Assembly: GCF_001194135.2 (NCBI RefSeq)
Contig: NC_068984.1
Span: 130,354,794-130,418,793, forward strand
From: Octopus bimaculoides
Lineage: Eukaryota
DNA length: 64,000 nucleotides
Direction of reading: 5' to 3'
Numbering within the stretch: position 1 is the first letter of the stretch; each line of letters begins with the position of its first letter. Shown piece after piece: positions 39,276-64,000 of the stretch. Below the pieces are notes generated by a model. The model was given only the letters and a program-made list of their open reading frames with translations. It did no database searches and was not told where the DNA came from. Both the position numbers and the translations under genes were made by a program.

Positions 39276-39361
<86 letters not shown>

Positions 39362-40202
39362 GTGTCTTAAACATCATATGATAGTTGTAAGCATTGTATC
39401 ACCCTCATTCAAGCTGTCCTCATCATTTCCAGTCTTATGTGAAAACATGCCTGGACTTGGGGGAATATTACCCTATTTAGAAACCAATGAAGATTGACAT
39501 CTGGCCATAGAAAATTTGCCCCAGCAGATTTTGTCTGATCCATGCATGCATGGGAAAATAGATGTTAAAATAACAATGATAATGTGTGCTCAGTTAGAAA
39601 ATATCTGGTGATATAATTTTGGATTGGAAAAGATTTAAATATGCTGGGTAAATAAGCATGATTGAATTATACAAGACGAAAAACAAAAAAAATTGTTATA
39701 TGCAGAGAAACCTCTATTTGGATGTTGTCTCACTGTTGCTATATCTGTGATAGATTCTGTTGATGAATTGAAGTTATAACTAAAATGGCAGCTTTTTAAA
39801 AATTCTTTTTTTTTAATAGTTATAGAAATAATTCCTCACTAATGAGTGTCTGTTCATAATTCAAATATTTTTATTCTTTAAAATTTATTTTAGTGTATTT
39901 GAAGAGTTCCATCATTATATCTGTGATGTGAATTTTTCTATTAAACCAAATGGTTGTGGAGATTGAACTTTATGTTGGATTAATTTTGAATTGAAGAGGC
40001 TGACACTTGTCTCTTTGGTCTTTAAAATAATAAAATCATTTTTTTTTTTTATATGCTGAACATAGAAATTTACTGTTAGTTAATTAATATTTGAAATATT
40101 AACTAAGAATAGTACTTCAGATTTGGTGTATTACTTATTTACAAATAAGACCTATTGTTTTTATTGCTTATTTATGTTTCTCTTTTCTGTTTCTTTTTTC
40201 AG

Positions 40203-40289
40203 AATTCCCATTCTCAGAAACCTCAGAAGATTCTGGTCATGAACCCTTAGCAGTGCCACCACTAACTGCTGCAGCAGCAGCAGGACCAT
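40203..40289 (+). CDS. MTA1: Candidate 87-nt in-frame cassette exon of MTA in the BAH variable loop (K-FPFSETSEDSGHEPLAVPPLTAAAAAGP-F)
   Basis: Long polypyrimidine tract (about 40176-40200) plus AG, donor T|GTAAGC at 40290. 87 nt = 29 codons, phase 1 to 1, open only in the frame required by exons 3 and 5, and GC-richer than its flanks. No protein homology recognised, so support is splice signals and frame only. Confidence 0.7.
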
Positions 40290-42933: not shown

Positions 42934-43124
42934 TTCCTTCTATGGAAGAAGATTCCGAAGAGATCAATGATGACATCACAGAGAAACAACGCCATCAATT
43001 GAAGCACAGAGAACTCTTCTTGTCAAGACAAGTCGAGACTTTACCAGCAACACATATTCGAGGAAAATGTGTTGTCACACTTTTAAATGAAACAGAATCA
43101 TTATTATCATATTTGAACAAAGAG
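42934..43124 (+). CDS. MTA1: MTA exon 5 (BAH: [63 protein letters not shown])
   Basis: Acceptor TTGCAG| at 42933, donor GAG|GTATGT at 43125, 191 nt, phase 1 to 0. Contains the conserved [28 protein letters not shown]. Confidence 0.96.
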
Positions 43125-45639: not shown

Positions 45640-45713
45640 ATGCTATGATGGTGTATTTTTCGTCATCAGCTAATGTACTTTTGTACTTGTTGATAATCGC
45701 ATGTCTGAGCATT
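45640..45713 (+). ncRNA. SNORD56: Box C/D snoRNA, SNORD56/U56-like, subtype 1 (D' = CAGC), in the intron after exon 5
   Basis: C box ATGATGG 45645-45651, guide TATTTTTCGTCA, D' CAGC, C' TTGATAA, D box CTGA 45705-45708. Terminal stem AAGGTAAATGC / GCATTTTACCTT. The guide is complementary to the conserved 18S segment UGACGAAAAAUA. The 5' half resembles human U56 as I recall it (AUGAUGGCAAUAUUUUUCGUCAACAGC). Confidence 0.82.
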
Positions 45714-47061
45714 TTACCTTCCTTATTATTTCTTTGAAAAGTCTTTCTGTTAACGAAAAGTACTCCATAAATAATATTATTGTCTTAAACATTACAATAT
45801 ATTTGAGATCTATTATAACCTAGTGAAAACAATTTTTTTTTTAATTAGCAAAGGAATATAAACAAATAGATAACTATGTTCAGTATTTGCAAAGAAATAT
45901 TCTAAGATTTAATAATAAACACATATATGTTAGGTGCTCAGAAATAAATGTGTAAATTACTTGTAACTTAATGCTTTCATTAACCAACCTACTCATGGTC
46001 ACCCTTTCTTATATCTAACCATTGTTTATTTTTACCTGTATATATTAAAATCAAAATATTGTAGCAAGCACAACTATGTAGTGGACATTGCAAGTTCTAT
46101 GTTTTAATTTCCTTTAGCAAAAGTGAGGAATTGAATCCTTAATTAAAATTCATATTTCCATGTTATAGGTTAGATGGATCACACTATACTATGTATCGCT
46201 CTAGTTTACAATGAGTGACACTATACCATATATCACCCTAGTTTACTATAAGTATGCTATGGAGGAATTCCTACCTCTTCAACATAGCAAGTCATTGCTA
46301 GGCTTACTTTGGGGGCCTCTCAATTCTAAGTTTTGGTTCCAAGCTTGAAACTTTTTCTCTAAATCTTTGATTCAACTATGAGAACCAAGCCATTGACATA
46401 CAAAGTTCCCGTGAACAACTAGTTTAACCATTTAGTTTTCAGATTACTTTGTAAAACTTTATGCTTATTTACTCACATTGCTTTGAATTAATCATGCATT
46501 ATTTCATAGCTTCCAGATTTTGATGATGTGATTATTCTTAGAATGACATTGCAGGATAGATGTGAGAGGCCAGTTCCGGCTGGTTTGAACATAAAATGGG
46601 TAGAATATTTTGGCTGGTTCTGGCCAATTTAAATGCTAAAGAGTTAAATTACTCTTATGGCCTGAATGACTGTAATACAAAGAGGACTACGAACCAATCC
46701 CTATTGTACCCCAACCTACCTATTATATTCCTTGCTGAACTCATTAACTCACCTAACTGACAATATTGCATACATGTTTTGTATAAACCATTCATCTATT
46801 CCTTGTTTTCTAAATGACTGCCAGACTGCATACTGTGAGACTTTGTTAATGACTTTCTAAGTTTAGAAAGACTAGGAAGAGGGCATTGGTGATACCTTCT
46901 GGTATGAATCTGTCATATTTTTTAATATCTGTTAATTGCAACATTGTTTATAGAAGATATTTTATGTATATGTACTTCTTACTGCTGTAACAAAATTTAG
47001 TAAAGTTTGTCTATAAAACCAAAGTGCTCTTTCACTGAGATGAATTATTTTCTCTTTTCAG

Positions 47062-47179
47062 GATACATTTTTTTATTCATTAGTATATGATCCACAACAG
47101 AAAACATTGTTGGCAGACAAAGGTGAAATTCGAGTTGGTTCAAAATATCAAGCAGAAATTACTCCTTTACTTAAAGAAG
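47062..47179 (+). CDS. MTA1: MTA exon 6 (end of BAH, start of ELM2: [39 protein letters not shown])
   Basis: Acceptor TTTTCAG|, donor G|GTAATA at 47180, 118 nt, phase 0 to 1. Conserved [25 protein letters not shown]. Confidence 0.96.
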
Positions 47180-48442
47180 GTAATATTTTGTTTAGTGTTG
47201 GCATTACTACACTTGCTGTTTCTTCAATATGTCTTAACTTCTTCCATTATTGACAGTTATTATGCATGTTCTTCAGAGAAACAACTTAGAATTAAATACA
47301 GAGATAGTTTGTTTAATTAATGATTGAGAAGAAGTAGAGGCAAGATGTTGGTCAGAACTCTATGAATATGTTATTCTAGTTAAGAAATTTATGTATACAG
47401 TTACAGTGTCATTATGAAGTTGCTAGATGGTGTGCAAAGAAAGATATTCAATACGAAAACTTGTAATATACATCCCAATATCCATTTGCTAGTCATAGTA
47501 ATCAAGTGTGATATAGAAACTTACTGACATTATCAACACTAAGTAGTAAGTGGTGAGATTGAAAATATATGGATATCAAGTGTTTTGTCTAAACACCTGG
47601 ATGTCGCACACACATATATTACCTGGGCATTGCTGTGTGGCCATGTTAGTTTACTTACAATACCATTCTATATCTACTGACCCAATTTCCATTTTCTGTT
47701 TCCTGTGACTTTATTATTACAGTTTTCATAAATATTTTCATCAAATAGTTAGTCAGGTCATCTTAAACTAAGCCTGTAGGTATTTCATTTCCACACACTC
47801 ATACCATACACTGAACAGTACATAGATCTAATACCTAAGAAGAATTAACTACCTGTATGTTTCTATTAATTATAAAAATTAGGATTGGGAAGGAAGGACT
47901 CTATTAAACTTGAATTTGATCTCTCCGATTTTCCAGAACCTAGAATGCCATGATTTGAACTGATTTCTTGATTTTTATCTGCTAATGAAATATTAACTTG
48001 GGTGTACCAGAAATAGCTGAAGATAGAAAGAGTTTATGGCGACTGTCTATTAAAGGAGTAGTTAAATGAATACTTGTACATCATGAGTGATATCAGTTCA
48101 AATACCAGTTCTTTTATTTTTCAGCTAGCCTCTTTCTCTTATGATAAATATGTAATTAGTTAATGTAGTTTCTCTTTCTATTAGTTTTGTTCATATAGTT
48201 TTCATTGACATTCAAAGACAAGATTATATTATATGTTTGTCAGAAGTGTGCTGTAAAAGATTAATATAGGTACATAATATGAGAATTGCACACAGGTACT
48301 TACAAGAAAAATGGTAGTTGGTGATGATATGGGAAATGAGAAAAATTTTAGCACAAGATGCAGGTGTCTGGTGTCATATTTTAGAGATTATTTGAAGTAA
48401 AATTAACTTTTTTTTTTTTTTTTTTTTTTTTGTTGCTTATAG

Positions 48443-48551
48443 GTGAAAAAGATGGAAGAAGCTTGGATGAACTTGAGCAGTTAATTTGGCTGCCTGGCCC
48501 TGATAACACCTTAACACCAAAAGAAATTGATCAGTTTTTGATATTAGCCAG
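48443..48551 (+). CDS. MTA1: MTA exon 7 (ELM2: GEKDGRSLDELEQLIWLPGPDNTLTPKEIDQFLILA)
   Basis: Poly-T tract plus TAG| at 48442, donor AG|GTTGGT at 48552, 109 nt, phase 1 to 2. Matches the MTA pattern E..G.D...LE..VW....LT..QIDQFL..AR. Confidence 0.93.
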
Positions 48552-49169
48552 GTTGGTTTACAGAAATTTTGTTTATTAAATGAACTATTCTAAATTGTCC
48601 AAAGTGTTCTTGTTTTGTCTTTTCAGCCAGCCAAAAATGTTGTGTTCCAGAAATTTTTTTTTTTCGTTTTTTTCACATTTCTCGTCTTAAAGAAGATGAA
48701 TTCAGTCTGTTGAAATTTATTTAAAAAAAAGTTTTATTCTTTTTCCTCTTTTTTGTTATGAAAACACCAGACCAGGGTTTTCTTATATTTAAATCAAAAT
48801 ACTGATGAAGGCAGTGATATGATGTGATTTCACTTGGTAAACACTTGTACACTGTCAGAAATTGCAACAATGTGAATTCCTTTTCCTCAAGGTTTCTTAG
48901 TTATTTTTTCCTTGTGTATTTTTTTATTTTTATAACACCCCGTCCACCCCCCAAAAAAAACTTTAAAAAAAAAATTATGTTAGCTTCAGATTTAGTAATA
49001 GTAATTCTAATTTTGAATGCTTTTATGTTTTTTTTTCTCTTTCTTTTGAATGTAACAACTAACAGAAATGCTATAAGCAATAATATGGAGTGGACTTTGA
49101 ACTAGATGTTTCAATTTCTAAATTAAAAAGCAATCTGTGGTTTAAAAGTGAATTCTTTCCATTTGGTAA

Positions 49170-49251
49170 ATGCCGTGATGTATTATTTTTCGTCATCAGC
49201 ATTTATACCATTTAGTTTTGGTATCTGTTGACAATTGAAAATCTGAGCATT
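49170..49251 (+). ncRNA. SNORD56: Box C/D snoRNA, SNORD56/U56-like, subtype 1 (D' = CAGC), in the intron after exon 7
   Basis: C box GTGATGT 49175-49181, 13-nt guide TTATTTTTCGTCA, D' CAGC, internal hairpin ATACCA/TGGTAT, C' TTGACA, D box CTGA 49243-49246. Terminal stem GGTAAATGC / GCATTTTACC. Confidence 0.82.
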
Positions 49252-50533
49252 TTACCTATCTTGGTCCCCTTAAGTTTGAATTTTTTTTCCAGTCCTATTT
49301 GTTGGGTCTGTCCTAATGTATTTAAATAATTAGTCAGTAAATTAATATTTATTACATAATTTGACTAATACACCAGCTTTTAACATGACATGTTGGTTTG
49401 ATATATATCAGATATCTAATGGAATTTAGGCTTCTGATGTTGTTTGATAGTCTTTTTGTTGTCAAAGTGGGTTTTTTTCTTCTCAAATATATTAATATAT
49501 TTTAGGTTAATACTTCCAGACTAAACATAACTGTGGTTAACCCTTATCTAGAAGACGTGTGATGAAATTACTTTCTTTTATTTAGGCATAATGTATTGGT
49601 GAATACATTATCCAATGTGTCCTTTTTTTTTATAAGACATTGAAGGGTTGCATGTGGAAGATGTGACTATGAATTTGTAGGTGGTCAAATGACCACATAA
49701 TGATACTTTCATTAGCTTGTTAGGCTATTTATTATGTGATCTATGAGATGTTTTCACTTGATAACCTTGCTATTGCTTATTTTCATTATTAACGTTTTGA
49801 GTAGATAGCATGAATAACATAAAGCACAAAATAATTTTGAGTTTCAAATTACTTACTTCAATGGTTGAGACAACATTTAATACAATAGCTTCATCCACTT
49901 GACCCATAACCTAACTTTAGACAATGACATTATATATTCAGTTTGAACTGTTGCAGGTTAGGGATTGAGAAACATGCAATAAATTGTTTGAAGATTTTTT
50001 TTTTTTTCCTTCTTAACAAGTGTTTTCTTATAGCCTCAGACTGACCAAGGCTTTGTCTGAAATTTAGTAAACAGAACCTGTGTGGAAATCCAACATATAT
50101 GTTCGTTATGGCCTGAACAATGTGCTTTGACAAATGGAGATTGATGAAATAACTACCAGAAGTACTGGGAACAATATGACTGATTAAACCCGAACATAAC
50201 TGGGTAAAGTTAGAATAACAATAGAAATGATTTAGATCAATATAGTCATTGTAGATTATTGGAAAGTGTGTGTTTATTGAGCATTCTATATTACAGAATG
50301 TGTATATGTATGATGGGTGGCTGCAAAGTCTAGTTCTCTAGTGTGTGAAAATAGTGATGTTGGTAGATATATATATATATATATATACACACACAAATAA
50401 AAAAGAAAAATACACAGAGCAGACATTGAATATTGGCTCCACCTGGAGTTGATGAATCCAGTCCTATTTTATTATGATTTAGATCAGAATTTTTTTTCAC
50501 TTTGGTTCACAATATAAAACTCTTGTTTACCAG

Positions 50534-50633
50534 GTCTGTTGGTACATTTGCTCGAGCTTTGGATTGTACCAGTACTGTGAGGCAGCCAAGTCTTCATATG
50601 AGTGCAGCAGCAGCTTCAAGAGATGTCACATTG
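50534..50633 (+). CDS. MTA1: MTA exon 8 (ELM2: [34 protein letters not shown])
   Basis: Acceptor ACCAG|, donor TTG|GTAAGT at 50634, 100 nt, phase 2 to 0. Near identical to MTA1 [34 protein letters not shown]. Confidence 0.96.
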
Positions 50634-52156
50634 GTAAGTATTGCATTACTCTTTCATTCTTACTCCCAGTCGTATGTCCAATCAACATTCATCATTATTA
50701 TCATCATTTTAACAGCCATTTTCCTAAGCATGCATAGGTTGGGTGGAAGTTGTTGAAGCTGAATTTCTATGGCCAAATGCCCTACCTGTTGCCAACTATC
50801 AAAGGTTTCCAAGTGAGGCAATATTTTTCCATAGACAGACATGCTTCCTTCCACAAAAGATTGGGAACAGACACTGCTTGTATGATGATTATATTCTTTT
50901 ACAACTATCACGTAATATCACAAGGAGAGGCTGATGCATGCGCACACGCATACACACATGAACTTTTAGTTTCTGTCTATGTAGAAATGATGAACTTCTG
51001 TTAGTTGTGCACAATGAGACAAAAATGTTGTTGTCTTTCCAGATGCACAGCTTCTTAATATCACAACTATTACCTTATGTCTATTTTCCATCAAAGGATT
51101 TTGAGTAAAATGATTTAAGTGCATATTTATTTCCAAATTTGTATTCTTGATTTTGTTAAACATCTGAAGATTAACTATCAGAACCTCTTGAATAAAACAA
51201 ATGTCAAGGTACCTTCATAAATTTTAAGGGTATTGTTATGGGAGGATATCTCCTGTAAAATATTAAATGTACTTACAAAATATTCTGAAAGATGTTCAGA
51301 ATTTAAATGTGTGTTACTTTAATGTAGATGTAATAAATCACATAATCCATATGTTTTACTTTAAAATAAAAAATCATACTTGGGAATTAAAATATTTAGA
51401 TATTACTTTTAAATAATTAAAGGACATTTTTATGAAATAATAAGATGTGAAACCTATAGATACTAAAGAAAGAGTGCAATCATTCTGGCCAAGTGTTGTG
51501 CTTGCTTCAATTTGCTTGACTAAAGTTTTGTTTGTTTCTAATGGTTTGGTTGGAAAGAACAGTTTATGCCCATGGCATTTGTAAACCAGACCGGTGAGAT
51601 AGATGTAGATTACTTGAACCAGAGCTGTTAGGAAATTCTAGTGGGAGAAAGGACTGGGGAAAGTGGTCAATGTGTGGCTTAAATGGAAAGGCAGAAAAAC
51701 TATCAGTGACAAGAGGGAGCGATGAGTGAGTTTGGAGGGTGTAGATGGGAGTTCCACAAGCCCGGCTGAAGAGCATATGTAATAGTAAAGGTAGAGTGAG
51801 ATTACAGCTCATTCAAACCTGAGATTGGAATGTTGACAATCAATTGCTTACCAATCAGTTTAGTTACTTTTCGATCAGGTTGGGATGTCTGAATAGAAGC
51901 AGCATTAGTTATCCAAGATGTGTGAACTATAATCCACTGTATAGGGTTATTAGTAATGCAAAGGCCAGTCTTTGTGATATAGTCTTTGCAGTGTCAAGGA
52001 AGGACATGATATTATCAATAATGGTGAAGTTGAGTATCTGTTGTGACTTTGTGGGGTTTGTTTATATTTTGAGATGAAGTGTGATATTGTTTTCTTTGTG
52101 TGTAATTATTGACAATTAAGGTGGTGAAGGAGACAATGTAAATTTGNNNNNNNNNN

Positions 52157-52452
52157 AAGTGTTGTGCTTGCTTCAATTTGCTTGACTAAAGTTTTGTTTG
52201 TTTCTAATGGTTTGGTTGGAAAGAACAGTTTATGCCCATGGCATTTGTAAACCAGACCGGTGAGATAGATGTAGATTACTTGAACCAGAGCTGTTAGGAA
52301 ATTCTAGTGGGAGAAAGGACTGGGGAAAGTGGTCAATGTGTGGCTTAAATGGAAAGGCAGAAAAACTATCAGTGACAAGAGGGAGCGATGAGTGAGTTTG
52401 GAGGGTGTAGATGGGAGTTCCACAAGCCCGGCTGAAGAGCATATGTAATAGT
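52157..52452 (+). other. Exact 296-nt copy of 51491-51786 bounded by N gaps; probable assembly artefact
   Basis: I saw no differences from 51491-51786, and N runs flank it on both sides. Confidence 0.75.
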
Positions 52453-52751
52453 NNNNNNNNNNTCCCAGAAGTACATATTTGTATAACCCATCCTTGTCTG
52501 TTAAGGGTACCACATAAATTTATATGTATGCAGTCAAAACTTACATTGCTTTTACATAAGTATCTTTAAAAATGAAGTATTTGAAGCATCATTTAGGTAT
52601 TACAGAGTTAATAGGAAAAAATAGAAGTAAAACAAGAAAATATTGTAATTAGCTGTTCTTGCATAGCTTTCAAACAGATTTTCTTTTTGAAGTTATATTG
52701 ATTACAAATTGTACTACAATTAATCACCCTGCTTGAATCTCTAGATTATTT

Positions 52752-52786
<35 letters not shown>

Positions 52787-52872
52787 TTTAGTGAAAGGTT
52801 TAAACAGTGATCAAACTGTTTTTAGATTGAAGTTATTTATGCTGTTTAACTAAATCTTTCACAATAAGGTAA

Positions 52873-52950
52873 CTGCTATGATGGTTTTATTTTTCGTCTC
52901 TGAATGTACCATTAACTTTGGTACTTGTTGATAAAAAATGTCTGAGCACT
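52873..52950 (+). ncRNA. SNORD56: Box C/D snoRNA, SNORD56-like, subtype 2 (D' = CTGA, shifted register), in the intron after exon 8
   Basis: C box ATGATGG 52878-52884, guide TTATTTTTCGTC, D' CTGA 52900-52903, hairpin GTACCA/TGGTAC, C' TTGATAA, D box CTGA 52942-52945. Proximal stem TGC/GCA and distal 10-bp stem TTCACAATAA (52858-52867) / TTATTGTGAA (52951-52960). Confidence 0.78.
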
Positions 52951-54164
52951 TTATTGTGAATTTGCAAACATAAGGATGGTTAAGTTACATAGTTTCAAGT
53001 TCAATGTCGCTGCACGGCACTTTTAAGTAAGTGCCTTCTATAACTCGGACTGGTGAATGCCATATGAAGGAATTCAGGTGATAGGAACTGTGTATGCTCA
53101 TATTTCAACACTTATGTTTGTCATGACTATTCCACCCTGTGCTTTCATAAACTTGTGTAATTAAGAAATCCCTTAGCTGAAAAACAGGAAGAGTTGCCTT
53201 GAAGAAGAGAATCTGGATGGAAAATCCTGCTTCAACTAACCCTCTGTACAAACCTAGCATAGAAGAACAGATAATGAATAAAAACACACACTATTAAAAT
53301 TATCAATAATGCTTTCTTAACATTTTAGACTCTAGTGTGTGCGTATAACATCATATGACCTATCTGGCAGTTGATATATGTATAATTTAAATTTTCACTT
53401 AAAAACATTAAACAAATTCTGTTCAAAACTAGAGCAAGGGAGACAACCTAAGTTATACTGTACAGTGAAAATTGCATAGTATTAAACAAATTTATAGGGT
53501 ATATTCATAGAATATTTTGTAGCTAAACGTATCATTTTACCCATTCAGCCAACTGTATGATGATATCAACATGGCATCAGGCATATCTTTATTTGTAGCA
53601 TTCATAGCTAAACATTGGGTCTTATGCTGTACTCCATTATTTACTTCAGTATTTTTTTGAAGTGGTCAGAAAACCCAATACAAGATGTGTTCATTTAATG
53701 TCCACCTTTCCATGCTTACAAAGGTCAAGCAAAATTCATTGAGACAAGTTTCTCTCTTTTTTTTTTTTATAACTGGATGCTCTCCCTGCTGCCAATCTTT
53801 TAAATAATGCTGTATGTCCCTTAATGTTTTGAACACAAACAGAACAGTGGCTAAACTTGATTTCTTGGAAGACTGCAAACTAGTGATACTATTTACTTGT
53901 ATGACAGCAGTAGTCATTTACAACCAGTACCTGATCTCAAGGCAAGAAATGAACACATTCAGGCATATCCCACACGCACACGTACAAATATACACACGAT
54001 GGGTTTTCAATTTCCATCTACCAAAACCATTTACAAGTTATTGGCCAGTAGAAGACCCTTGCCCAAGGTATTGCACAGTGAGATTGAACCTAAAACCATG
54101 TGGGTGAGGAAGCAGACATCTTAATTGCAAAACTCTCTCTCCCCTCTCTTCCCCCCTCTCTCTC

Positions 54165-54202
<38 letters not shown>

Positions 54203-56409
54203 GTTTTCTATATGCACAGTTAAATGTATGACTACTGGTGAATTGGGAGCTCCATATCATCATCCAGTCTACTTAATATACAGTTGTCATTAACAGTTAG
54301 TTAAATTTAGTCAACCATGACATAAATTTCTGCATTCTATCATGCATTTAAAATCCAAACATATATATATATATATATTAACAACCTGAACCGCAAGCTA
54401 ATTATCATTTAACTGTTACACTAAAGGACAGTCTGCAAAATCAGTATGATATATATTGTAATAGATATATTCATTACTTATAGTTAATTATAAGGTCTAA
54501 TATGCATGTTTAATCCTTACTTAGTTTAGGTTCAAATTCCACACAGGCAAAGTTAGCAAAACTATAAGTAAAGATTTCGAGAGCATTTCATAACAAAGCT
54601 ATTTCATATTTAAAAATTTGGGGAACTGTGGGCATGTGATAGTAAACTAGCAGTTGATATTGAAATTAAAACAAAGGTATATTTATCCACAACTAAAATT
54701 TTATTGAAACAATAAAGAGGAAGGGAGACAACCTTAATTATAGTGTAAAGTGAAAAAAAAAAAGTCTTGTAATAGACAAAATTTATAGATATTTAAAAAA
54801 TTTTCTAGTGGAACTTGATAATGTTTGAGAACTGCATACTACTCTTCAAACAATTAGATCCAGATATTAATGCTTCTTTAAACAAGTCTATATATGAAGA
54901 GCTTACTTTCAAAACCAGATATATGCATCAGAATCACTTTTGAGTAATTGAGGAAACAACAACTTGAATATATCTGATATTGATTAGAAGACTAAGATTT
55001 GTCTACGGTCTATATGGCATCTATCCCAGTTTGACCGAAAAAAATTTCTCATGCATGAAGCCAGCTTGCAGATTGTATTTTAATGGTTATCATGAAATCG
55101 ACCAAATATGCACTTACACTGATTTTGAAAGTAAGCTCGTCTTATAGTGAACCGTCTTCAAACTGAATTAATAGCTAGGGGTTTAGTAGTGTTTTCGTTG
55201 ATTATCTGAGTTTATTGATGATAGGAGTTAATGTTACATACATATAAGAAATACATAAGCTGTATGCTAAACAAAATAAACACTAACAAAATTTCAGAAA
55301 ACACAGGCATCAGACCAGTTCTTGGACAAACTCGGGGCAGACCTTGGAGGTAGAGGGGAAATAACTGAAAAGGTGGCAAACAACAACAAAAGAACTGTGA
55401 CTAACAAACAACAAATTGATTGCTTAACCAGTGCAATTAAACAAATGATCAATTAGTTAGTTGGTTTGACATTTAAACCAATTGACTAACGAAGAAGTAA
55501 TGCTGAACTAATGTGTATGTCATTGGCATAATGACCCTCCCGAGACACAAAATTTGTTTCAACACACAAATTCACACCAAGAATTTTACAAACCAAATAC
55601 AAAAACGAAATAAAAATGCTTTATAAAGCTAAAATAGATTTCATGAGGTGAGCTCGATTTGATGGATGGTGGTAGAGGTGATGGTTGTTATTACTAGTTA
55701 GTTGAGCTATAATGCTCCACTGTTCTTTACTTCTCACATGTGAGGTGACTGAGGAAGGACTGAACTTGAAATAGCATCAGGTGAATCGTGAGTATCAATG
55801 ACAAGGCTTAACAGGTGTAGTGAAGTTCTGATAGATAAATTGTCTTGAAGAATGAATTAGGTTTCAGTTGTTTACCATACTGTGTTGCTTCTAAATAGTG
55901 TATTCATTCTAGGTCCTAAAATATTGAGAACTAAAAATCAGTTTCTGTCAACAAGTCAATATACAATGCTGGATGCTCCTCGTATTGACAGCCCTCACCT
56001 TTTTCCAAGCCAGGTAAAATTTCACTTTGGGAAACAAGGAAACTAATAACCTTTTTTGATAATGATGGTAGTGGTGGTACTTATGTATCATCATCTCGTG
56101 ATGTCAAGGCAATGGTATGCACATTTGCTCCCCCCCCACTTATATATATATATATAGTCAGATGTTATGCAGCATGCTTCATGCGTGTGTATATTCATCT
56201 GTTTCCTTTGATGCCTGTTTTTCCATGTTAACTGGGTTTAGACAGGAAATTGTGGATGGAGCCTTGCTTGTGGGTAATTTGTTGACAGATGTAAACAACC
56301 ATCACCTGGCACTGTTCAAGCAGAAATGCTGACATCACTATATGCCTAGCATATTATCCCAAACATTCATAACATTTTTTTTTTCTTATTTTTCTTTCTG
56401 TCCCTACAC

Positions 56410-56487
56410 CTCCTCTTAGTTCATTAATCCGATTCTTATCTTTCAGCTCTCCTCTTAGTTCATTAATCTGATTCTTATCTTTCAGCT
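56410..56487. repeat. 39-nt tandem duplication (2 copies, 1 mismatch)
   Basis: Unit CTCCTCTTAGTTCATTAATCYGATTCTTATCTTTCAGCT. Confidence 0.8.
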
Positions 56488-58327
56488 CTCCTCTCACCTC
56501 TAATTTTCCATCTCATCTTCACCTATTTTTCATTTCTTTCCTTCTCTCTCCTACAACTTGTGTTCCCCATCAGTTGCAGCCTGTTTCTCTAACAGATTCT
56601 AAGACTCTGTTGTTTTTCTTTTGCGCACACACACACACACACACCTATATACTTACATATATACATGTATACATGTGTATGTAAGCCAATGTATATATGA
56701 ATCTTTAACTTGTTCAAATCATTGGACTGAAGCCATACTGAGGCACAGCCTTGAAGGGTTTTAGCTGAACAAATCAACCCTAGTCTTCTCCCACTCTTGT
56801 TTTAATTTTCTTTTTGACACATGATACATATTCTATCAGTCTCTTAGCTGATACACTAAGTTTAGGGGATGTAAACAAACCAACACTGGTTGTCAAACAG
56901 TGTGGGGGACAAACACAAAGATATGCATATGCAATGGACTTTTTTCATCTTCCAGATTTACTCAAGGCTTTAGTTGGCTCAGGGTTATGTGGTTAGGAAC
57001 CAAACTTTTTACCACACAGCCACATCTGCACCTATATGCTTATAAAGACAAATGCATACACATTTCATATGGATAAACATGTGAAAAAATATATTTGTGG
57101 TGCAAGAATGGATGTTTATTTATAAAGATTCTTTTGGAACTACCCAGTTTCAGGTTAATATCACTATGCTACATCTTTGCAATTTGTCAGTTTGTATAGC
57201 CCTGCCCTAACCAGTGCCTTCTGAGTGAATTTGAGAGATGGAAACTGAAAAAATCTGGTGTGTCTGTGTGTGTGTAATCTCTGCTTAAATGCTGATGTTG
57301 ATATTTTTTGTTGATGGTATAGTTATGTGTATTTGAAGAATTGTGAAATAAAGGATTCTTCTACTTGATACATGGAGAAGGGCTGGCAATAGGAAGAGCT
57401 TTTGGCTGTAAAAGCTTGTCTCCACTAAATCTCCATCCAAATGCATGCTGGCATGGAAAAACAAACACCAAATAAGTAAAAGTGTGTGTGTGTAAATATA
57501 TTTTATACATACACTGGTGCAGGTATGGTCATGTGCTTAAGGAGCTTGCTTCCCAACCATGTGGTCTCTGGTCCAGGCTCACTGTGCGGTCTTTTGGGCA
57601 AGTGTCTTCTATTATAGACTTGGGATGATCAAAACATTGTGACAGGATTTGGTTGACAAGAACTAGAAGAATTGTCTGTATGTGTCTTGTTTTGACATTG
57701 TGTGATGGTTGCAAATGATCATCATTGTTACATAAGCAATATTGTTCAGTTCTAGTCTTCTTTGAAAAACATGTCTAGCCATAAGGAAATACTACCTGGA
57801 AACAGATAAGGGTTGGTGACAAGAATTGCATGCAACTGTAGAAAACCTGCTTCAACAAAATTTTGTCTTGACCCATGCAAGCATGGAGTGAACATTAGAC
57901 AGTAATGATGACATATATACGTACGTACATACATACATACATACATACATAAATAGATATATATATATATATATAATAAAACTACACGTGTATGTGCATA
58001 TATATATATATGTTCATGTACATATGTGTAATGTTTAGTGTTTTAAGTGTGGTATTGGAAGCATCAACAGTTTACATTAGGTATTATAGAATTGACTTGG
58101 AAAACTTGATGTAGAATTCAAAGCGATGTGCTGAACTTGAGTAATAATACATGTTCTTGTATAGTTTTGAAACTGATCATATTTTTGATGTAATACTTGA
58201 TTAAAATCATTCTGCACTTTCTCATCTTGTTTGTGTAATATAGTATATCTTTTGGAAGACAAACTGATTGCAGTTCAGATATTTTAAATGTAAAGATCAG
58301 TGTATTTGTGCTGTTTCACAATAATGT

Positions 58328-58408
58328 AAATGCTATGATGGTTTTATTTTTCGTCTCTGAATGTACCATTTACTTTGGTACTTGTTGATGATCAATATCT
58401 GAGCATTT
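58328..58408 (+). ncRNA. SNORD56: Box C/D snoRNA, SNORD56-like, subtype 2 (D' = CTGA), second copy in the intron after exon 8
   Basis: C box ATGATGG 58335-58341, guide TTATTTTTCGTC, D' CTGA 58357-58360, hairpin GTACCA/TGGTAC, perfect C' TTGATGA, D box CTGA 58399-58402. Stems AAATGC/GCATTT and TTCACAATAA (58315-58324) / TTATTGTGAA (58408-58417). Confidence 0.8.
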
Positions 58409-58724
58409 TATTGTGAATTTCCAAGGATTAGCTTAGCTGTGCAGTTAAGAAGTTCACTTTGCAATTATGTAGTTTTAGCTTTGTTTCCACTGCTACTCTT
58501 GACATAGATGTCTTCTGTAGCCCCAGTTTGACCAATGCTATGTGAGTGAATTTGGCAGACAAACTGTTGTTTGTCCTTTCTTGTTTGACATTATGTACTG
58601 TTTGTGACCAAACATCATTATTATGCAAAAAAAGTATTCCTGGATGAGTGTTTCATAATTTGCAACAGAAATAAGGAAGAGCTTATAAGGATTCCTTAGA
58701 TTAATCAAGGCATTTATGAATTAA

Positions 58725-59240
58725 TTCAAGTGACAATGGAAGTAAATGAATTGGAACTTCCTTTCTTGGACATTTTGGTTATAAAGGAAAATGAGAGTAT
58801 TGCAACTAATCTCTGCTGCAAAGGCATGAGCTGCAAATATATGAACACACTCCAATACTTAGACCTTAGATTTTGCCATCCATCCCATATTGAAAGAAAT
58901 ATCCCATTTAATTTGGTAAAATGTACATGTGTAATAGTTACAGACACAGATGAAATATGACTGGAAGAGCCAAAAATATTCTTCTGGACACCTGAAAAAC
59001 TTACTAAATAATGTCATAGCAAATACCCCTTACTTGCAGACAGACTGGAATTTGTTTGAAGGGGAAGACATAAATAAAAATATTCCATTTGTAGTCAGCC
59101 ATAATTCCAAAAGCTACATAGTCTTGCATTCAGCCAAATGATATCTTCCATTTTGACACCAATCTTCAAATCTAAGAAAAATAGTTACAAATTATTTGCA
59201 ACAAACACAACCACCAAATCTTGAAAGACTCTTAACAAAG
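58725..59240 (+). mobile_element. Penelope-like element RT C-terminal fragment
   Basis: TMEVNELELPFLDILVIKE..QYLDLRFCHPSHIERNIPFNLVK matches the PLE RT pattern FTME.E..LPFLD..V...YL...S.HP....RNIP.NL. Degenerate. Confidence 0.7.
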
Positions 59241-62200
59241 GTGAAATTTACATATATTTATTATTGTGAAAGATAGTTAAATTCTTATGAGATATGGAAC
59301 AGTGATCTCAAATGACTAAATGGTAAATTTATTGACAAAGAAAAATTCCACCTCATAAAGATACTTGTGAAAACAGCACCAAAAAAAAAAAAAAAAAAAT
59401 CAAGTAATATAGAAGTGGGAGAGAAGATAATGAAACCAGGGCTTTAGAGAATATCGAAGCAAACTGTAGTCTTCTATAAATTTCCTGGAGAATCATCCAC
59501 AGTGCATTAGAAATTTGGGACAGAATGAAAGAACAAAACTTAGAATGCTTACTGACAAGACGCACATACTTTCTTGTATTCCAAATAAACTAATTTGGTT
59601 TCATTCCTTAACTCAACCTGCAGCAGAAGACCATGAATATGTCTTAATTTTTAGTTTTCCATGGTCGTAGCTTAATGTTGGTGGGAGGGTACTTTCAAAG
59701 AGAATTTTCCTAATACCTGCAATGACAAATCCAATGTGGATTTTGCCAGATTATGAAACTAACAATTAAGGGGAGAGTGGCAGCCCAAGTCACGGAACTA
59801 AGAAATAAGGAAACAAATGCACCCTGTTTTGTTCTTTCTCATCACAATCTAACAGAAGATATATGACCAGCAATAAAACAATTGGCTGTGTGAAACAAGC
59901 CAAGGGTGATAAATGCTTGCTCATTAGCATTAATTTCTGTATGGAATGTGTTAATTATTGTGGTTAATCAATTGTTGGAATATGGATTATAGACTGGTTA
60001 TAGATTGTTTTATCTCCCTGATTCATTGTTTTCAATTGAAGTGCTCTCATCCAACCAAAACAGAACAGCTCTTTATAAGGTGTGACTGAATGAAAGAATA
60101 GTGGAGACTTCATGAATTATTTGTTAGTTTAAAAAAATCATCTGTTGATGGAGGGTATACTTATACAAAACAATACATTCTACTTATATTTTTCTATTAT
60201 GCAGACCTAGAGGCCTCAATGGTTTCGCTAGAGAAGTAGAAGTGTTCAAATCCTATGGACTTAGTTGTGTATAATGTGGTTTAAACTGTCTTTGTCATAT
60301 AATCTGTTTATGCTTGATGTTACATTGAATAAATGTTTGTTGTTTTCCCGCCGTGCTTTGGTCTCTCAACTCCTTGATGGAGTGATAGGGTGCTGCCATT
60401 CTAATATACAATGTTTTAGGCATTTTTAGTCCCAGTGGAGCCTATTCCCCTCCAGGTCTGACCACAGCCACCTCAGACACAAAAAGAATAAGGGAGTGAA
60501 AAAGAAGAACCAACTCCAGTACATGACTGGTACTTTATTATCAGCCCTGAAAGGCAAAGTTGATTTTAGTGGGATTTGGAACTCTGTGCATAGAGAGCCA
60601 GTGTGATAACTTCAAAGCAGTCTATCCACTGCCATCTGACTGCCTTAAATGTGAGGATGAATAAAAAGAGGTCTTTCTAGAGAATTTGAAAATAAGAAAC
60701 TAAAACAATAAGACAAAAACCTTGTCATTAGTTAACATTCTTTATATGTGGTATAATCACAAATTACTGCCATGGTTCAACCCTCAGTCAACCCTGATCA
60801 AGCAGATCTATAATCACCAAATTCATTATATCTTTCCTTTTTGAAGTTCAAGCAACCTCATTGAAAATTCCCAATTGGTTTGCCCAACAATTGGCAAATT
60901 CTACCTAACAGTTATGATTTATACATGAGGAATAGGGGATTGACTAAATGAACTCTCTAAACCTTATGGCAGCCTCATTAGGAAAAGAAAATCCTAAATC
61001 AGAAATTTCCAAAGACTAATTTACATTAACCAGTCAGAATAGAAAGAAAGTAACAATTTAGGGAATGTTCTCCATGAAAAACCAATTCCTTTTTACTGGG
61101 CCAGTCAAAATATTTGTAATTCACAATTATGAGAGCTAACACTGTAAAATTGAGTACTTTATGATACATTATGACTGGTTTTTAGTAAATTGATGGTGAG
61201 TGGGGGTTCCAGGCTTACCTGTGTAAACATGGCAATTTGAATGGAAAATGTTGGTTAAGCTCTATATCTGTTTCCCCCCAAAGATGCATTCTTTGATTCT
61301 CGTCTGTACATTGTTACATATTTTCCTATAAAATGTTAATAGACATGTGCATGCCAGAAGTGTCATTGTTACATGCACATGTCTCCATTTAACATTTTCC
61401 TATAAACCTTGATGTATACATATAGATTTACTCATTCACTTCATATATAATTCTTATTCTTGTTTTACCTGTTTTAATTGACTTTATTTGATTTTAGTTG
61501 AATGTTTATAAATTATCATAGATCTTTCAGTGGGTGTAATTCTTTTGGTTTTAGTTATGATTGTGTATAAGATGGTGACACCATTTAAAAAAAAATCTTT
61601 TATGCAAAGTATTCATTTGTTAGTTCTGTTAGGCACAAGTATGGCTGTGATTAGAAGCTTGCTTCCCAAGCACACATCTTCACGTTCAGGCCCAGGCCAA
61701 CAAATACTTGTGAGTGGGTTTGGTAAGGGAGACTGAAACAAGCACATTGTGTGTATGACTGTTTGCTTGCCTTCACTTCATGTGATAGTTATAAATGAAT
61801 GTCACCAACATGCAAGTGGTGTCCTTCATTTCCAATTTTCCACGGAAACAGTAGGGTATTTGTTGGTAATGAGGTGACGTCCATCTGTAGCAAATTTGCC
61901 TTGACAGATGCCATCCAACCCATATAAGTTTGGAAAAGTGGGTGTTAAATGATAATGGTGGTGTTAATCACAGACATGTCTTCAACAGTATTTCTGATTT
62001 CTTAGGGGTGATTTAAGTTTAATTGAATAATGCAGGATGCAATAAAGATTTCAAACATGTCTGCTGTACATATTGAACATTCCAATGTTAATTAGTTTAT
62101 CTATAGTTTAATTTTGTTTTTCCAAAAGGAACAGTAGCACTTTTTGTCTAAATCTTAAAGTTAAATGATGAATACTGAATTAATGGTATTTTTTTAAAGT

Positions 62201-62573
62201 TATAGTTATCTCGATAGGTGTTATTTACCATCAACACCTAATTGTGTTTTGTTGTCTAAATAGTAACATGAACAGTTTATTTTTTTAAAAAACCTGTAAT
62301 AATAAATAATTTATTTGATGGCTTGTAAGATGCACCTCCTTTTTTTTAACCATCAAAAATATCTCTTACACTAATTTTGTTCCTGGTGTTTAACATACAC
62401 TGCGGAAATTAGGATGCACCTGATATGCTGTCAAATATGGTATATTGCTGCTATTTCTATTCATTCATAGTGTGGGCTATTTATACGTAGTTGGTTTAGA
62501 AATTAGTTTCATGTGTGAAATATGCTGTTTTAGCATTGTTGCTTCTCTAAAATTTTATGTTATCTTTTTTCAG

Positions 62574-62762
62574 TTTCATGCCATGGATACTTTACATAGA
62601 AGTGGCTATGACATAGCGAAAGCTGTTACGAGTTTGGTACCACAAGGTGGTCCTGTACTGTGTCGGGATGAAATGGAAGAATGGTCTGCATCTGAAGCTA
62701 ATCTATTTGAAGAAGCACTAGATAAATATGGCAAAGACTTCAATGATATAAGGCAAGATTTT
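62574..62762 (+). CDS. MTA1: MTA exon 9 (end of ELM2, SANT: [63 protein letters not shown])
   Basis: Acceptor TTTTTTCAG|, donor TTT|GTAAGT at 62763, 189 nt, phase 0 to 0. Conserved [30 protein letters not shown]. The gene continues beyond the window. Confidence 0.96.
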
Positions 62763-64000
62763 GTAAGTATTCCTTTTTCTTGTTTTTCATTCTATAATTC
62801 TATATTATTACGATATATTTTATGCTCACTTGATGGGGTGATATTTTGTTGGTTTGGTTTTTTTAAGAGCTGAAGTTAGGACGTTGGTCGCCAAACAAGC
62901 TGAGTATAATGCAGTAGTTTTGATATATAATAGATTTTATAATTGACCAGTATTCTAGTACCTTTAAATCACACTATCATGTATAATTATATATACTTTC
63001 TTGAAGATCTTATATCTAATATGCTATCATGAACACTTTGTTTTTATTTTGTAGTTTATTTCATGATCATCCTTGTTTAATGTCTGCCTTCCATGCTGGC
63101 ATTTTAAAAATTATTATGGCTTTACATACATTTTGTCATTCATGATATGGTTTTAGAAATTTAAGTTTTTCGAAATATGCAGTGTTTCATATCATTACAC
63201 ATTGCCTAGACTCATTAGTTTTTGACTGAGCTGTTTGGTGTGAGTTGTAGCAAGGCAGTCTCTAATTTGTAATTCAGTTAATTTATTTGTGGGGAAAACA
63301 GGAATGCCATGACATTTATTGAGGGGCTAGCACTTTATCGTTAGATCATGTGATGCCTTGCAGTAAATATGAGAACATTCACTGTATCATAGTCCAACAC
63401 AGCTTGTCCTGTTGCTCTAAATTATCAAACTTTGACAATTGATTAATATATAATTGTATTAACATTTCGGATTTTAAGGTAGTGTATTTGGTATAAAGAT
63501 TAGACTTGTATAACTGAAGCAGAATGTTAAAACAAAAATGTTATAGAAATACAATACATTCATTAATATAAACTGGTGTTTGTATGTTTGCTCTCTGCTT
63601 AGATGATGTTTACATTACACTAAAACTGTAAAATGAATGTTTTTTTGTAATGGTAATGTTTGGGCAATATTTTAGCTATTTCCTTCTGACAAGGGTAAAA
63701 ATTTGACTTGGCATGTATTTTTTATAGCTGCCTTTTCAGTAACTATCTTTTCAAGTGTGTGTGTGTGTTTTTTGTGGGGGGGGGGGGAATAAAAATATCC
63801 CATTTTGAATATTGTAGAAAGAACTTTCTCCAATGAGCATTTTGGGACAGTCTCAATCTGTTCTTAAATTCCTTTCATTTGGTAAACTCTTTTGTGTTTG
63901 GATAGAATGTCTTGCAGTTTTCATTTTGGTTCTCTGCTGTGAATTGAAACATTTCTGATGTCAACTTTTCTTGCCGTCCCTTTGAGTCTCAAATTATCAG

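What the first reader, a model, noticed from the sequence alone, without database searches (positions are those of the whole stretch)
52878..58402. One-nucleotide D' box shift in snoRNA subtype 2 predicts a new methylation site next to Cm517
Seen: subtype 1 (45645, 49175) reads TTTTTCGTC-AT-CAGC, and subtype 2 (52878, 58335) reads TTTTTCGTC-T-CTGA, i.e. one base lost and D' converted to the canonical CTGA. Established: the target pairs with the 5th nucleotide upstream of the D/D' box. Computed: in subtype 1 that is G, pairing the C equivalent to human 18S C517. In subtype 2 it is C, pairing the adjacent G (human G518 equivalent). Both subtype-2 copies are intact, so this looks like neofunctionalisation of a duplicated guide RNA that would give adjacent Cm-Gm in the small-subunit rRNA. 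I do not know of a reported Gm at this position, but cannot search.
Basis: partly seen in the sequence, partly recalled or inferred. Interest (0 to 1): 0.82.

Follow-up and report, generated by a model that had tools for sequence, protein, structure and literature searches.

The report
Octopus SNORD56 guide RNAs, two registers
Introns of the octopus MTA3 gene carry two old, conserved versions of one small guide RNA whose targeting frame differs by one base, so they should methylate two neighbouring bases of 18S ribosomal RNA; the second base is already known to be methylated in fruit flies.

Summary
The window is Octopus bimaculoides, the 5' half of the MTA3 gene. Its introns hold sense-strand box C/D snoRNAs with the invariant guide ATTTTTCGTC.

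- **Subtype 1** (45637-45716, 49167-49254) reads CGTC-AT-CAGC. This matches the guide, the odd D' box and the spacing of vertebrate SNORD56/U56, which guides 18S Cm517.
- **Subtype 2** (52870-52953, 58327-58410) reads CGTC-T-CTGA. The fifth-nucleotide rule then selects the next base, G518.

Subtype 2 is neither recent nor decaying. It is present in O. vulgaris, O. sinensis and Argonauta hians. In Argonauta two intact copies sit in a different intron, where nearby intron sequence no longer aligns with Octopus except for repeats and a few short conserved stretches. The boxes and guide are conserved, and one hairpin pair shows a compensatory change.

The Gm site is not new to biology. Drosophila 18S-Gm475 and Dictyostelium 17S-Am466 both map, by numbering offsets I derived from published tables, to human position 518. 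What may be new is that both registers coexist as paralogues in one lineage, which predicts a Cm-Gm doublet.

No expression or methylation data were available, and the octopus 18S sequence could not be checked. I rate this a new member of a known kind, of moderate interest.

The parts
52870..52953 (+). Subtype-2 box C/D snoRNA copy S2a. C box ATGATGG 52878-52884. Guide 52885-52899 (core TTTTTCGTC 52890-52898, spacer T 52899). D' CTGA 52900-52903; fifth base upstream is C52895. Hairpin GTACC/GGTAC 52906-52924. C' TGTTGATA 52926-52933. D box CTGA 52942-52945. Terminal stem TGC 52874-52876 / GCA 52946-52948. Outer stem CACAATAA 52860-52867 / TTATTGTG 52951-52958.
   Evidence: Sequence read. nhmmer 72.3 bits. 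Parsed. Fold has a long terminal stem plus an internal hairpin, z = -4.46. The body is 93-95% identical to the O. vulgaris and O. sinensis orthologues, against about 80% in the flanks.
58327..58410 (+). Subtype-2 copy S2b. C box 58335-58341. Core guide 58347-58355, spacer T 58356. D' CTGA 58357-58360; fifth base upstream is C58352. Hairpin 58363-58381. C' TGTTGATG 58383-58390. D box CTGA 58399-58402. GCA 58403-58405.
   Evidence: z = -4.70. It is the best match in the window for both Argonauta subtype-2 copies (95-97 bits).
45637..45716 (+). Subtype-1 (SNORD56-like) copy S1a. C box 45645-45651. Core guide 45656-45664, spacer AT. D' CAGC 45667-45670; fifth base upstream is G45662. C' TGTTGATA 45688-45695. 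D box 45705-45708.
   Evidence: Rfam SNORD56 (RF00275) gives 17.9 bits, E = 0.21 on a 161-nt search; the alignment covers the guide, CAGC and C'. The body is 96-99% identical to its orthologues against 81.6% in the flanks.
49167..49254 (+). Subtype-1 copy S1b. C box GTGATGT 49175-49181. Core guide 49186-49194, spacer AT. D' CAGC 49197-49200; fifth base upstream is G49192. C' TGTTGACA 49226-49233. D box 49243-49246.
   Evidence: z = -3.16.
30501..30569 (+). Dead subtype-2-type copy (c30k). C box is AGGATG, D' is TTGA, and the D box is deleted. It shares flanks with S2a, including a downstream SINE-like element.
11549..11630 (+). Third family member (S3). C box ATGATGG, guide GAGATATTTCGTC-AT-CAGT with only three T's, D box CTGA. 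Its target is uncertain.
   Evidence: nhmmer E = 0.066. The body is 82/82 identical to O. vulgaris, against 89.8% in the flanks, p = 2e-4.
6119..62765 (+). Host gene: the 5' half of MTA3 (metastasis-associated protein). Exons are near 6119-6145, 8005-8085, 10402-10494, 40208-40288, 42933-43124, 47059-47181, 48442-48558, 50520-50633 and 62574-62765. S1a lies in intron 43124|47059, S1b in 48558|50520, S2a and S2b in 50633|62574, and c30k and S3 in 10494|40208.
   Evidence: tblastn. Translated exon sequence matches Octopus bimaculoides MTA3 (P0187/P0190) apart from HSP-end residues at exon boundaries, including the two positions that differ from O. vulgaris.

Best explanation
The window holds an intron-encoded family of box C/D snoRNAs in Octopus bimaculoides MTA3. 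All copies descend from a SNORD56/U56-like guide and pair with 18S rRNA at GUGACGAAAAAUAA through the antisense element upstream of the D' box.

- **Subtype 1** keeps the ancestral frame: a 2-nt spacer followed by a degenerate D' box CAGN. This places the C517 equivalent opposite the fifth nucleotide, as in vertebrates.
- **Subtype 2** has a canonical CUGA D' box that starts one nucleotide closer to the guide. Fibrillarin bound at the C'/D' motif should therefore methylate the next base, the G518 equivalent. The duplex is 12 bp (G515-A526) and occupies positions 2-13 upstream of D'.

Both subtypes have been kept by selection since before the Octopus/Argonauta split, while individual copies were duplicated, converted and lost. 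Octopod 18S is therefore predicted to carry Cm and Gm on neighbouring residues.

Shown here: the sequence anatomy, the relationship to SNORD56, deep conservation, and structural support. Inferred: that the octopus 18S has the standard metazoan target sequence, that the RNAs are expressed, and that the G is actually methylated.
For: 1. **Anatomy.** C, D', C' and D boxes, a terminal stem and a D'-C' hairpin are present in all four copies. Folding z-scores are -3.2 to -4.7.
2. **Subtype 1 resembles SNORD56.** The Rfam RF00275 consensus ..AUAUUUUUcaUCAACAGC..GUGUUGAuAC..CUGA aligns with S1a over the guide, CAGC and C'. Human SNORD56 is assigned to 18S C517 (PMC4288182).
3. **The D' frame of subtype 1 is right.** Every snoRNA-like homologue found on metagenome contigs has the 2-nt spacer, whether D' is CAGA, CAGT or a canonical CTGA, for example CGTC-AT-CTGA in L103 and CGTC-AC-CTGA in L034. 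Argonauta subtype 1 reads CAGA or CAGT.
4. **Subtype 2 is old and maintained.** CGTC-T-CTGA copies occur in O. vulgaris (L003 48677), O. sinensis (L005 24120) and twice, intact, in Argonauta hians (L004 17064 and 18120). The Argonauta copies lie in another intron. The S2a orthologues keep the same frame with D' CCGA.
5. **Orthology groups.** Around the copies, apart from dispersed repeats and a few short conserved stretches elsewhere, Argonauta and Octopus intron sequence aligns only at exons and the snoRNAs, and subtype 2 hits subtype 2 best while subtype 1 hits subtype 1 best.
6. **Element-level conservation.** The guide core is invariant in 19 intact copies. The region upstream of the D box varies at 6 of 8 columns (subtype 2) and 8 of 9 columns (subtype 1).
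7. **Body versus flanks.** S2a is 93-95% identical between species against about 80% in the flanks (p = 1e-3 and 8e-5).
8. **Structure.** 93% of cells are paired, against 24-42% when the partners are slid. Hairpin pair 46-65 is A-U in 7 copies and G-C in 6.
9. **The rule.** The canonical fifth-nucleotide rule is described in PMC5699541.
10. **The site can be methylated.** The equivalent position is methylated in Drosophila (Gm475, fibrillarin-dependent, nanopore-validated) and in Dictyostelium (Am466).
Against: - There is no expression, fibrillarin-binding or methylation evidence for any octopod.
- The octopus 18S sequence could not be retrieved, so the target is assumed from metazoan conservation and from the invariance of the guide.
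- In O. vulgaris the S2a orthologue has D' CCGA and D box CAGA. The S2b orthologues in O. vulgaris and O. sinensis have a C-A mismatch at the stem pair next to the boxes. Some copies may therefore be impaired.
- The copies lie 1.3-9.6 kb from the next exon, and two share one intron. This is unlike the usual vertebrate arrangement.
- Non-canonical C'/D' motifs can break the fifth-nucleotide rule (PMC5389607). That caveat applies mainly to subtype 1.
- The equivalence of fly and Dictyostelium sites to human 518 rests on numbering offsets I derived from published tables, not on an rRNA alignment.
Confidence: 0.65

Rival explanations
1. The function is as in the best explanation, but the history differs. 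Subtype 2 would be the octopod orthologue of an ancient protostome guide for the G518-equivalent site (the guide behind Drosophila Gm475, snoRNA:CD68), not a cephalopod-lineage neofunctionalised duplicate of subtype 1. The similarity between subtypes 1 and 2 would then reflect shared constraint and gene conversion.
For: Drosophila methylates G475 and not C474. Gene conversion between copies is visible at the S2b locus of O. vulgaris and O. sinensis. Subtype 2 already existed at the Octopus/Argonauta split.
Against: Subtypes 1 and 2 share lineage-specific features that the vertebrate SNORD56 consensus lacks, namely the terminal stem GGTAAATGC/GCATTTTACC and the host gene. No snoRNA with a 1-nt spacer turned up among the metagenome homologues, although that scan was cut short.
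Confidence: 0.2
2. The subtype-2 copies are non-functional snoRNA pseudogenes or passengers of segmental duplication. Their intactness in this window would be chance.
For: They were duplicated together with a SINE-like flank. One sister copy (c30k) is dead. The O. vulgaris S2a orthologue carries changes in both the D' and D boxes. The copies lie far from splice sites, and two share one intron.
Against: Intact subtype-2 copies occur in Argonauta, where nearby intron sequence no longer aligns with Octopus. The guide and C box are invariant across 8 copies. The body is significantly better conserved than its flanks. A compensatory hairpin change and conserved terminal stems are present.
Confidence: 0.1
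3. Subtype 2 is expressed but adds no new site. It would methylate the same C as subtype 1, act only as an rRNA-folding chaperone, or guide modification of a different RNA.
For: The guide core is identical to that of subtype 1. Unusual C'/D' motifs can shift or multiply sites (PMC5389607).
Against: To hit C517, subtype 2 would have to act at the fourth nucleotide from a canonical CUGA. The departures reported in the papers read here are at the sixth position. No alternative complementarity is conserved, because the region upstream of the D box is variable.
Confidence: 0.05

Closest known systems
Vertebrate SNORD56 / U56 (Rfam RF00275), guide for human 18S Cm517
   Same: The antisense element AUAUUUUUCGUCA lies upstream of D'. 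Subtype 1 has the same unusual D' box CAGC and the same 2-nt spacing. The C box ends in UGAUGG and the C' box is UGUUGAU(A). The size is about 72-78 nt, the gene is intronic, and only the D' guide is conserved.
   Different: Subtype 1 scores 17.9 bits, below the Rfam gathering score of 36, and S2a, the only subtype-2 copy searched at the relaxed threshold, gives no SNORD56 hit at all. From memory, the host gene in human is NOP56; here it is MTA3. Octopods have multiple copies per gene. Subtype 2 has CUGA one nucleotide closer to the guide, so its predicted target is G518, not C517.
Drosophila snoRNA:CD68 and 18S-Gm475; Dictyostelium CD8 and 17S-Am466
   Same: A 2'-O-methyl is reported at the rRNA position that corresponds, by numbering offset, to human 518. 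That is the base subtype 2 is predicted to modify (PMC11014333; PMC8817022).
   Different: The fly table lists no Cm474, so the fly has only the G site. Octopods carry guides for both registers. The sequence relationship between subtype 2 and CD68 could not be tested.
Duplicated plant snoRNA isoforms with shifted guides (Barneche et al. 2001), and adjacent-site methylation by yeast U18, U24, snR13 and snR48
   Same: Gene duplication produces isoforms that predict new rRNA methylation sites (title seen). Neighbouring nucleotides can both be 2'-O-methylated, and the position of the D' box decides which one.
   Different: In yeast a single snoRNA with an unusual C'/D' motif hits two sites. Here two separate paralogues, each with one frame, would do so, and both have been kept across octopods.

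Membership tests
Box C/D snoRNA (2'-O-methylation guide) | A C box (RUGAUGA) near the 5' end and a D box (CUGA) near the 3' end, brought together by a terminal stem | tested here: met
   The C box is AUGAUGG or GUGAUGU, and CUGA is present in all four window copies. The terminal stem is predicted in every fold. Across 13 copies, 92% of stem cells are paired.
Box C/D snoRNA (2'-O-methylation guide) | Internal D' and C' boxes with an antisense element of at least 10 nt ending next to D or D' | tested here: met
   D' is CUGA in subtype 2 and CAGC in subtype 1. C' is UGUUGAU/C. Complementarity to GUGACGAAAAAUAA is 12 bp for subtype 2 and 13-14 bp for subtype 1. The target sequence is taken from general knowledge of metazoan 18S.
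Box C/D snoRNA (2'-O-methylation guide) | A stable processed RNA bound by fibrillarin, Nop56, Nop58 and Snu13 | not testable with these tools
   No expression or protein-binding data for octopods were accessible.
SNORD56 (Rfam RF00275) | Score at or above the Rfam gathering threshold (36 bits) | tested here: not met
   No hit at gathering level. S1a scores 17.9 bits, E = 0.21 on 161 nt. S2a gives no SNORD56 hit up to E = 10.
SNORD56 (Rfam RF00275) | A D' guide that places 18S C517 opposite the fifth nucleotide upstream of D' | tested here: met
   Met for subtype 1 (G45662 and G49192 at the fifth position). Not met for subtype 2, where C52895 and C58352 at the fifth position pair with G518.
Guides for the 18S position-518 methylation (fly Gm475 type) | The predicted target equals the rRNA base that is methylated in Drosophila and Dictyostelium | tested here: inconclusive
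   The prediction for subtype 2 comes from sequence. Fly Gm475 and Dictyostelium Am466 map to human 518 by offsets of 43 and 52 derived from published tables. No rRNA alignment and no octopus methylation data were available.
Guides for the 18S position-518 methylation (fly Gm475 type) | Sequence homology to Drosophila snoRNA:CD68 | not testable with these tools
   The CD68 sequence is not in the papers' held text and not in Rfam.
Retroposed snoRNA copies (snoRT-type) | A copy bounded by a poly(A) tract and target-site duplications, with no shared flanks | tested here: not met
   S2a, S2b and c30k share upstream and downstream flanks, including a SINE-like element. This points to segmental duplication. 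Poly(A) tracts and target-site duplications were not searched for systematically.

The most novel reading that the evidence does not exclude
Octopod 18S rRNA would carry a Cm-Gm doublet made by two paralogous SNORD56-type guides, and both would have been kept since before the Argonauta/Octopus split. This lineage would then preserve the intermediate state of a methylation site 'sliding' by one nucleotide, between the vertebrate pattern (Cm517 only) and the fly pattern (Gm475 only). The two guides could also be used differentially, giving ribosome heterogeneity.
Probability: 0.4. Interest if true: 0.5.

Novelty: new member of a known kind. Interest (0 to 1): 0.36.

Why it matters
If the prediction holds, octopods would be a natural example of how an rRNA methylation site moves during evolution: duplication of a guide RNA, followed by a one-nucleotide change in where the D' box sits. 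They would carry both the vertebrate-type (Cm517) and the fly-type (Gm at the next base) states at once. The case gives a precise, cheap test of the fifth-nucleotide rule in an unstudied phylum. It also adds the first analysed snoRNA family for cephalopods. It does not change the understanding of how box C/D guides work, and the G methylation itself is already documented in Drosophila.

Tried and rejected
- **Rfam.** The gathering threshold found nothing in the 64-kb window. Scanning 36 kb by E-value gave only microsatellite 'miRNA' noise and a weak SNORD16 hit. Short sub-windows were needed to see the SNORD56 alignment.
- **Gastropod MTA loci.** Lottia gigantea (L001) and Candidula unifasciata (L002) have no SNORD56-like copy. 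Hosting in MTA is therefore not a general mollusc feature.
- **Other cephalopods.** The Sepia pharaonis MTA gene exceeds the 100-kb limit, so no DNA was returned. The O. bimaculoides isoforms P0187 and P0190 are not on record as gene products, so the newer assembly was not fetched.
- **First protein search.** It missed the octopus proteins because hits appear to be capped at about 1.75 times the query length. I solved this by padding the query.
- **Metagenome scan.** Most hits were bacterial chance matches.
- **S2b alignment.** A global MAFFT alignment gave a misleading 63% body identity, caused by a 12-nt and a 41-nt indel or conversion tract. The gapless comparison is 90-91%.
- **Literature.** Supplementary tables of the Drosophila map are not held. 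An 'anywhere' text search for G475 returned only noise. No paper on cephalopod snoRNAs or rRNA methylation was found.
- **Idea considered and dropped.** I asked whether c30k is the ancient orthologue of the Argonauta subtype-2 copies, since both lie in the same intron. Its flank is 86% identical to S2a, which points to a recent O. bimaculoides-lineage duplicate, and no counterpart was found in O. vulgaris.

Full report
**1. The observation**

The 9-mer TTTTTCGTC occurs six times in the window, against 0.21 expected by chance. Five occurrences are on the + strand, and each sits inside a unit shaped like a box C/D snoRNA.

- S1a (45637-45716) and S1b (49167-49254) read C box, spacer, ATTTTTCGTC-AT-CAGC.
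- S2a (52870-52953) and S2b (58327-58410) read C box, TTTT, ATTTTTCGTC-T-CTGA.

All four then continue with a short hairpin, a C' box (TGTTGAT/C), 8-10 variable bases, a D box (CTGA) and a sequence complementary to the 5' end.

The fifth base upstream of the D' box is G in subtype 1 (45662, 49192). It is C in subtype 2 (52895, 58352).

A fifth copy at 30501-30569 is of the subtype-2 kind but has lost its C box, D' box and D box.

**2. Where the window comes from**

tblastn located exons of a metastasis-associated protein (MTA) gene on the + strand, between 6119 and 62765. The translated exon sequence matches Octopus bimaculoides MTA3, apart from end residues at exon boundaries. The match includes the two positions where O. 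vulgaris differs. The window is therefore O. bimaculoides or something extremely close to it.

All snoRNA copies are intronic and in the sense orientation:

- S1a lies in intron 43124|47059.
- S1b lies in intron 48558|50520.
- S2a and S2b both lie in the 12-kb intron 50633|62574.
- The dead copy and a further divergent member (11549-11630) lie in the 30-kb intron 10494|40208.

The copies are 1.3-9.6 kb from the downstream exon. All fold with long terminal or outer stems that bring the C and D boxes together, with z-scores of -3.2 to -4.7. From general knowledge of intronic snoRNA processing, such stems are the feature expected for snoRNAs that lie far from the 3' splice site. I did not test this.

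**3. What subtype 1 is**

No Rfam family reaches its gathering score. When a 161-nt stretch around S1a is searched, SNORD56 (RF00275) aligns at 17.9 bits.

The family consensus is ..AAUGAUGGCAAUAUUUUUcaUCAACAGC..GUGUUGAuAC..GUCUGA. It shares four features with S1a:

- a C box ending in UGAUGG;
- the guide;
- the unusual D' box CAGC, two nucleotides after CGUC;
- the C' box.

Human SNORD56 is the guide assigned to 18S Cm517 (PMC4288182). With CAGC as D', the fifth nucleotide is the G that pairs with C517.

Two further observations confirm this frame.

- Argonauta subtype-1 copies read CAGA or CAGT at the same place.
- A metagenome scan for the C box plus guide returned about ten snoRNA-like homologues from unknown eukaryotes. 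All have the 2-nt spacer, whether their D' box is CAGA, CAGT or a canonical CTGA. Examples are L103 (CGTC-AT-CTGA), L034 (CGTC-AC-CTGA) and L006 (CGTC-AA-CTGA).

Subtype 1 is thus a SNORD56-like guide for the C517 equivalent. It fails the formal Rfam threshold.

**4. What subtype 2 is**

It has the same guide core, the same C box and the same C' box. Its D' box is a canonical CUGA that begins one nucleotide after CGUC.

The duplex with GACGAAAAAUAA is 12 bp long. It occupies positions 2-13 upstream of D', and position 1 is a U-U mismatch. By the fifth-nucleotide rule (PMC5699541) the methylated base is the G that follows C517.

S2a was searched the same way and gives no SNORD56 hit, because the D' region differs.

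**5. Is subtype 2 alive? Comparative evidence**

I fetched the orthologous MTA3 loci of O. vulgaris (L003), O. sinensis (L005) and Argonauta hians (L004). An nhmmer profile built from the four window copies finds both subtypes in every species.

| Species | Subtype-2 copies | State |
|---|---|---|
| O. vulgaris | L003 42936 (S2a orthologue) | D' CCGA, D box CAGA |
| O. vulgaris | L003 48677 (S2b orthologue) | D' CTGA, D box CTGA |
| O. sinensis | L005 18035 | D' CCGA, D box intact |
| O. sinensis | L005 24120 | D' CTGA |
| Argonauta hians | L004 17064 and 18120 | both fully intact, CGTC-T-CTGA |

The Octopus loci are collinear with the window at 86-93% identity. The two Argonauta copies lie in a different intron, the one between the exons for amino acids 33-63 and 66-93.

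Around the snoRNA copies, Argonauta and Octopus intron sequence aligns only at the exons and the snoRNAs. Elsewhere only dispersed repeats and a few short conserved stretches align. Argonauta subtype-2 copies hit the window's subtype 2 best (95-97 bits, against 45-68 for subtype 1). Argonauta subtype-1 copies hit subtype 1 best (91-107 bits, against 48-65). The two subtypes are therefore two orthology groups older than the Argonauta/Octopus split.

Further signs of constraint:

- Across 19 intact copies the 10-nt guide core never varies. Within subtype 2 the C box never varies either.
- The stretch upstream of the D box varies at 6 of 8 columns in subtype 2 and 8 of 9 columns in subtype 1. Only the D' guide is under constraint.
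- The S2a body is 93-95% identical between O. bimaculoides and the other two Octopus species, against about 80% in ±400 nt of flank (p = 1e-3 and 8e-5). S1a shows the same pattern.
- On 13 aligned copies, 93% of proposed pairs form, against 24-42% when the partners are slid. One hairpin pair is A-U in seven copies and G-C in six.

This pattern is birth-and-death evolution under selection, not decay.

Some individual copies do look impaired. The O. vulgaris S2a orthologue has changes in both boxes. The S2b orthologues of O. vulgaris and O. sinensis have a C-A mismatch next to the boxes. The S2b locus in those two species also carries an S2a-like tract, which suggests gene conversion or indels.

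**6. Is the predicted site new?**

Not to biology.

The Drosophila rRNA map (Sklias et al. 2024, PMC11014333, Table 1) lists these 18S sites: Gm393, Cm419, Am425, Am441, Am469 and Gm475. The first five are marked as conserved with human. They correspond to human G436, C462, A468, A484 and A512, a constant offset of 43. Gm475 therefore corresponds to human G518.

Gm475 has these reported properties:

- It is fibrillarin-dependent and shows the largest drop on knock-down.
- It is validated by nanopore sequencing.
- It is assigned to snoRNA:CD68.
- It is marked as shared only with Dictyostelium.
- No Cm474 is listed beside it.

The Dictyostelium table (PMC8817022) lists 17S Am432, equivalent to human A484 (offset 52). 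It also lists an unmatched Am466, which lands on human 518 as well.

These equivalences are my inference from numbering, not from an rRNA alignment. Flies thus methylate the G, vertebrates methylate the C, and octopods carry conserved guides for both.

Neighbouring 2'-O-methyls, and the role of the D' box position in choosing between them, are known from yeast (PMC5389607 and PMC5699541). Duplicated isoforms that predict new sites were described in Arabidopsis (Barneche et al. 2001, cited in PMC8583080).

I found no paper on cephalopod snoRNAs or rRNA methylation.

**7. Mechanism and rivals**

Most likely (about 0.65), both subtypes are processed from MTA3 introns and assemble into snoRNPs. 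They would bind the same 18S segment one after the other. Subtype 1 would methylate the C and subtype 2 the adjacent G.

The rivals are:

- **Same function, different history (about 0.2).** Subtype 2 would be the orthologue of the fly-type guide, not a cephalopod-lineage neofunctionalised copy.
- **Pseudogenes (about 0.1).** The Argonauta data and the conservation tests argue against this.
- **Expressed but no new site (about 0.05).** This would need action at the fourth nucleotide from a canonical CUGA. The departures from the rule in the papers read here are at the sixth position.

**8. What could not be shown**

I had no expression data, no methylation data and no octopod 18S sequence. I could not obtain the fly CD68 sequence or any decapodiform or Nautilus genome. 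The metagenome scan was truncated.

**9. Verdict**

The functional prediction is well backed by comparative evidence. The event is ancient rather than local. The claim that the Gm is unreported does not hold.

This is a new, unannotated member of a known kind of guide RNA. Its evolutionary angle is a neat one and it can be tested directly.

Noticed in passing
window 11549-11630 (= L003 7828-7909): A third family member with intact C box (ATGATGG), D' (CAGT), C' and D boxes. Its guide reads GAGATATTTCGTCAT, with three T's instead of five, so only about 9 bp could pair with the 18S site. The body is 82/82 identical between O. bimaculoides and O. vulgaris, against 89.8% in the flanks (p = 2e-4). 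It was not found in Argonauta. Its target is unknown.
   Followed up: partly
window 30501-30569 and 30917-31774 (-): A dead subtype-2-type copy (AGGATG, TTGA, no D box) lies about 350 nt from a piggyBac-type transposase fragment (Pfam PF13843, E = 1e-20). Its flank is 86% identical to that of S2a. No counterpart was found in O. vulgaris, so it is probably a recent duplicate in the O. bimaculoides lineage.
   Followed up: partly
L003 35923-36013 and 37967-38054; L005 11342-11432 and 13394-13481: O. vulgaris and O. sinensis each have two extra S1b-type copies. They sit in insertions of about 1.4 kb and about 200 bp that are absent from the window. This shows copy-number turnover within the same host gene.
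   Followed up: partly
L003 48530-48910 and L005 23973-24353, compared with window 58180-58560: At the S2b locus, O. vulgaris and O. sinensis carry S2a-like sequence: 12 nt upstream, the region before the D box, and 41 nt downstream bounded by a TTGTGAATTT repeat. This suggests gene conversion between the two subtype-2 copies, or deletions in O. bimaculoides.
   Followed up: partly
window 51491-51786 and 52157-52452: Two 296-nt stretches are 100% identical and 666 nt apart, just upstream of S2a. O. vulgaris has a single copy. This is either a very recent tandem duplication or an assembly artefact.
   Followed up: no
window 34869-35054 (= L004 19902-20084): A 190-nt intronic element is 81% conserved between Octopus and Argonauta although the surrounding intron does not align. 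It has no Rfam hit and no obvious snoRNA boxes or coding frame.
   Followed up: no
window 39034-39120 and 40109-40288: The O. sinensis 809-aa MTA3 model has an alternative N-terminus that matches sequence inside the large intron. This could be an alternative first exon and promoter, or an annotation artefact.
   Followed up: no
window, general (for example 3655-3769, 19197-19286, 57538-57652): The window is a draft assembly with 2,438 N's. It contains dense TA/TG microsatellites, tRNA-like SINE copies and LINE-type ORF fragments. Weak Rfam 'miRNA' hits at 56620-56696 and 57927-58043 are microsatellite hairpins.
   Followed up: no
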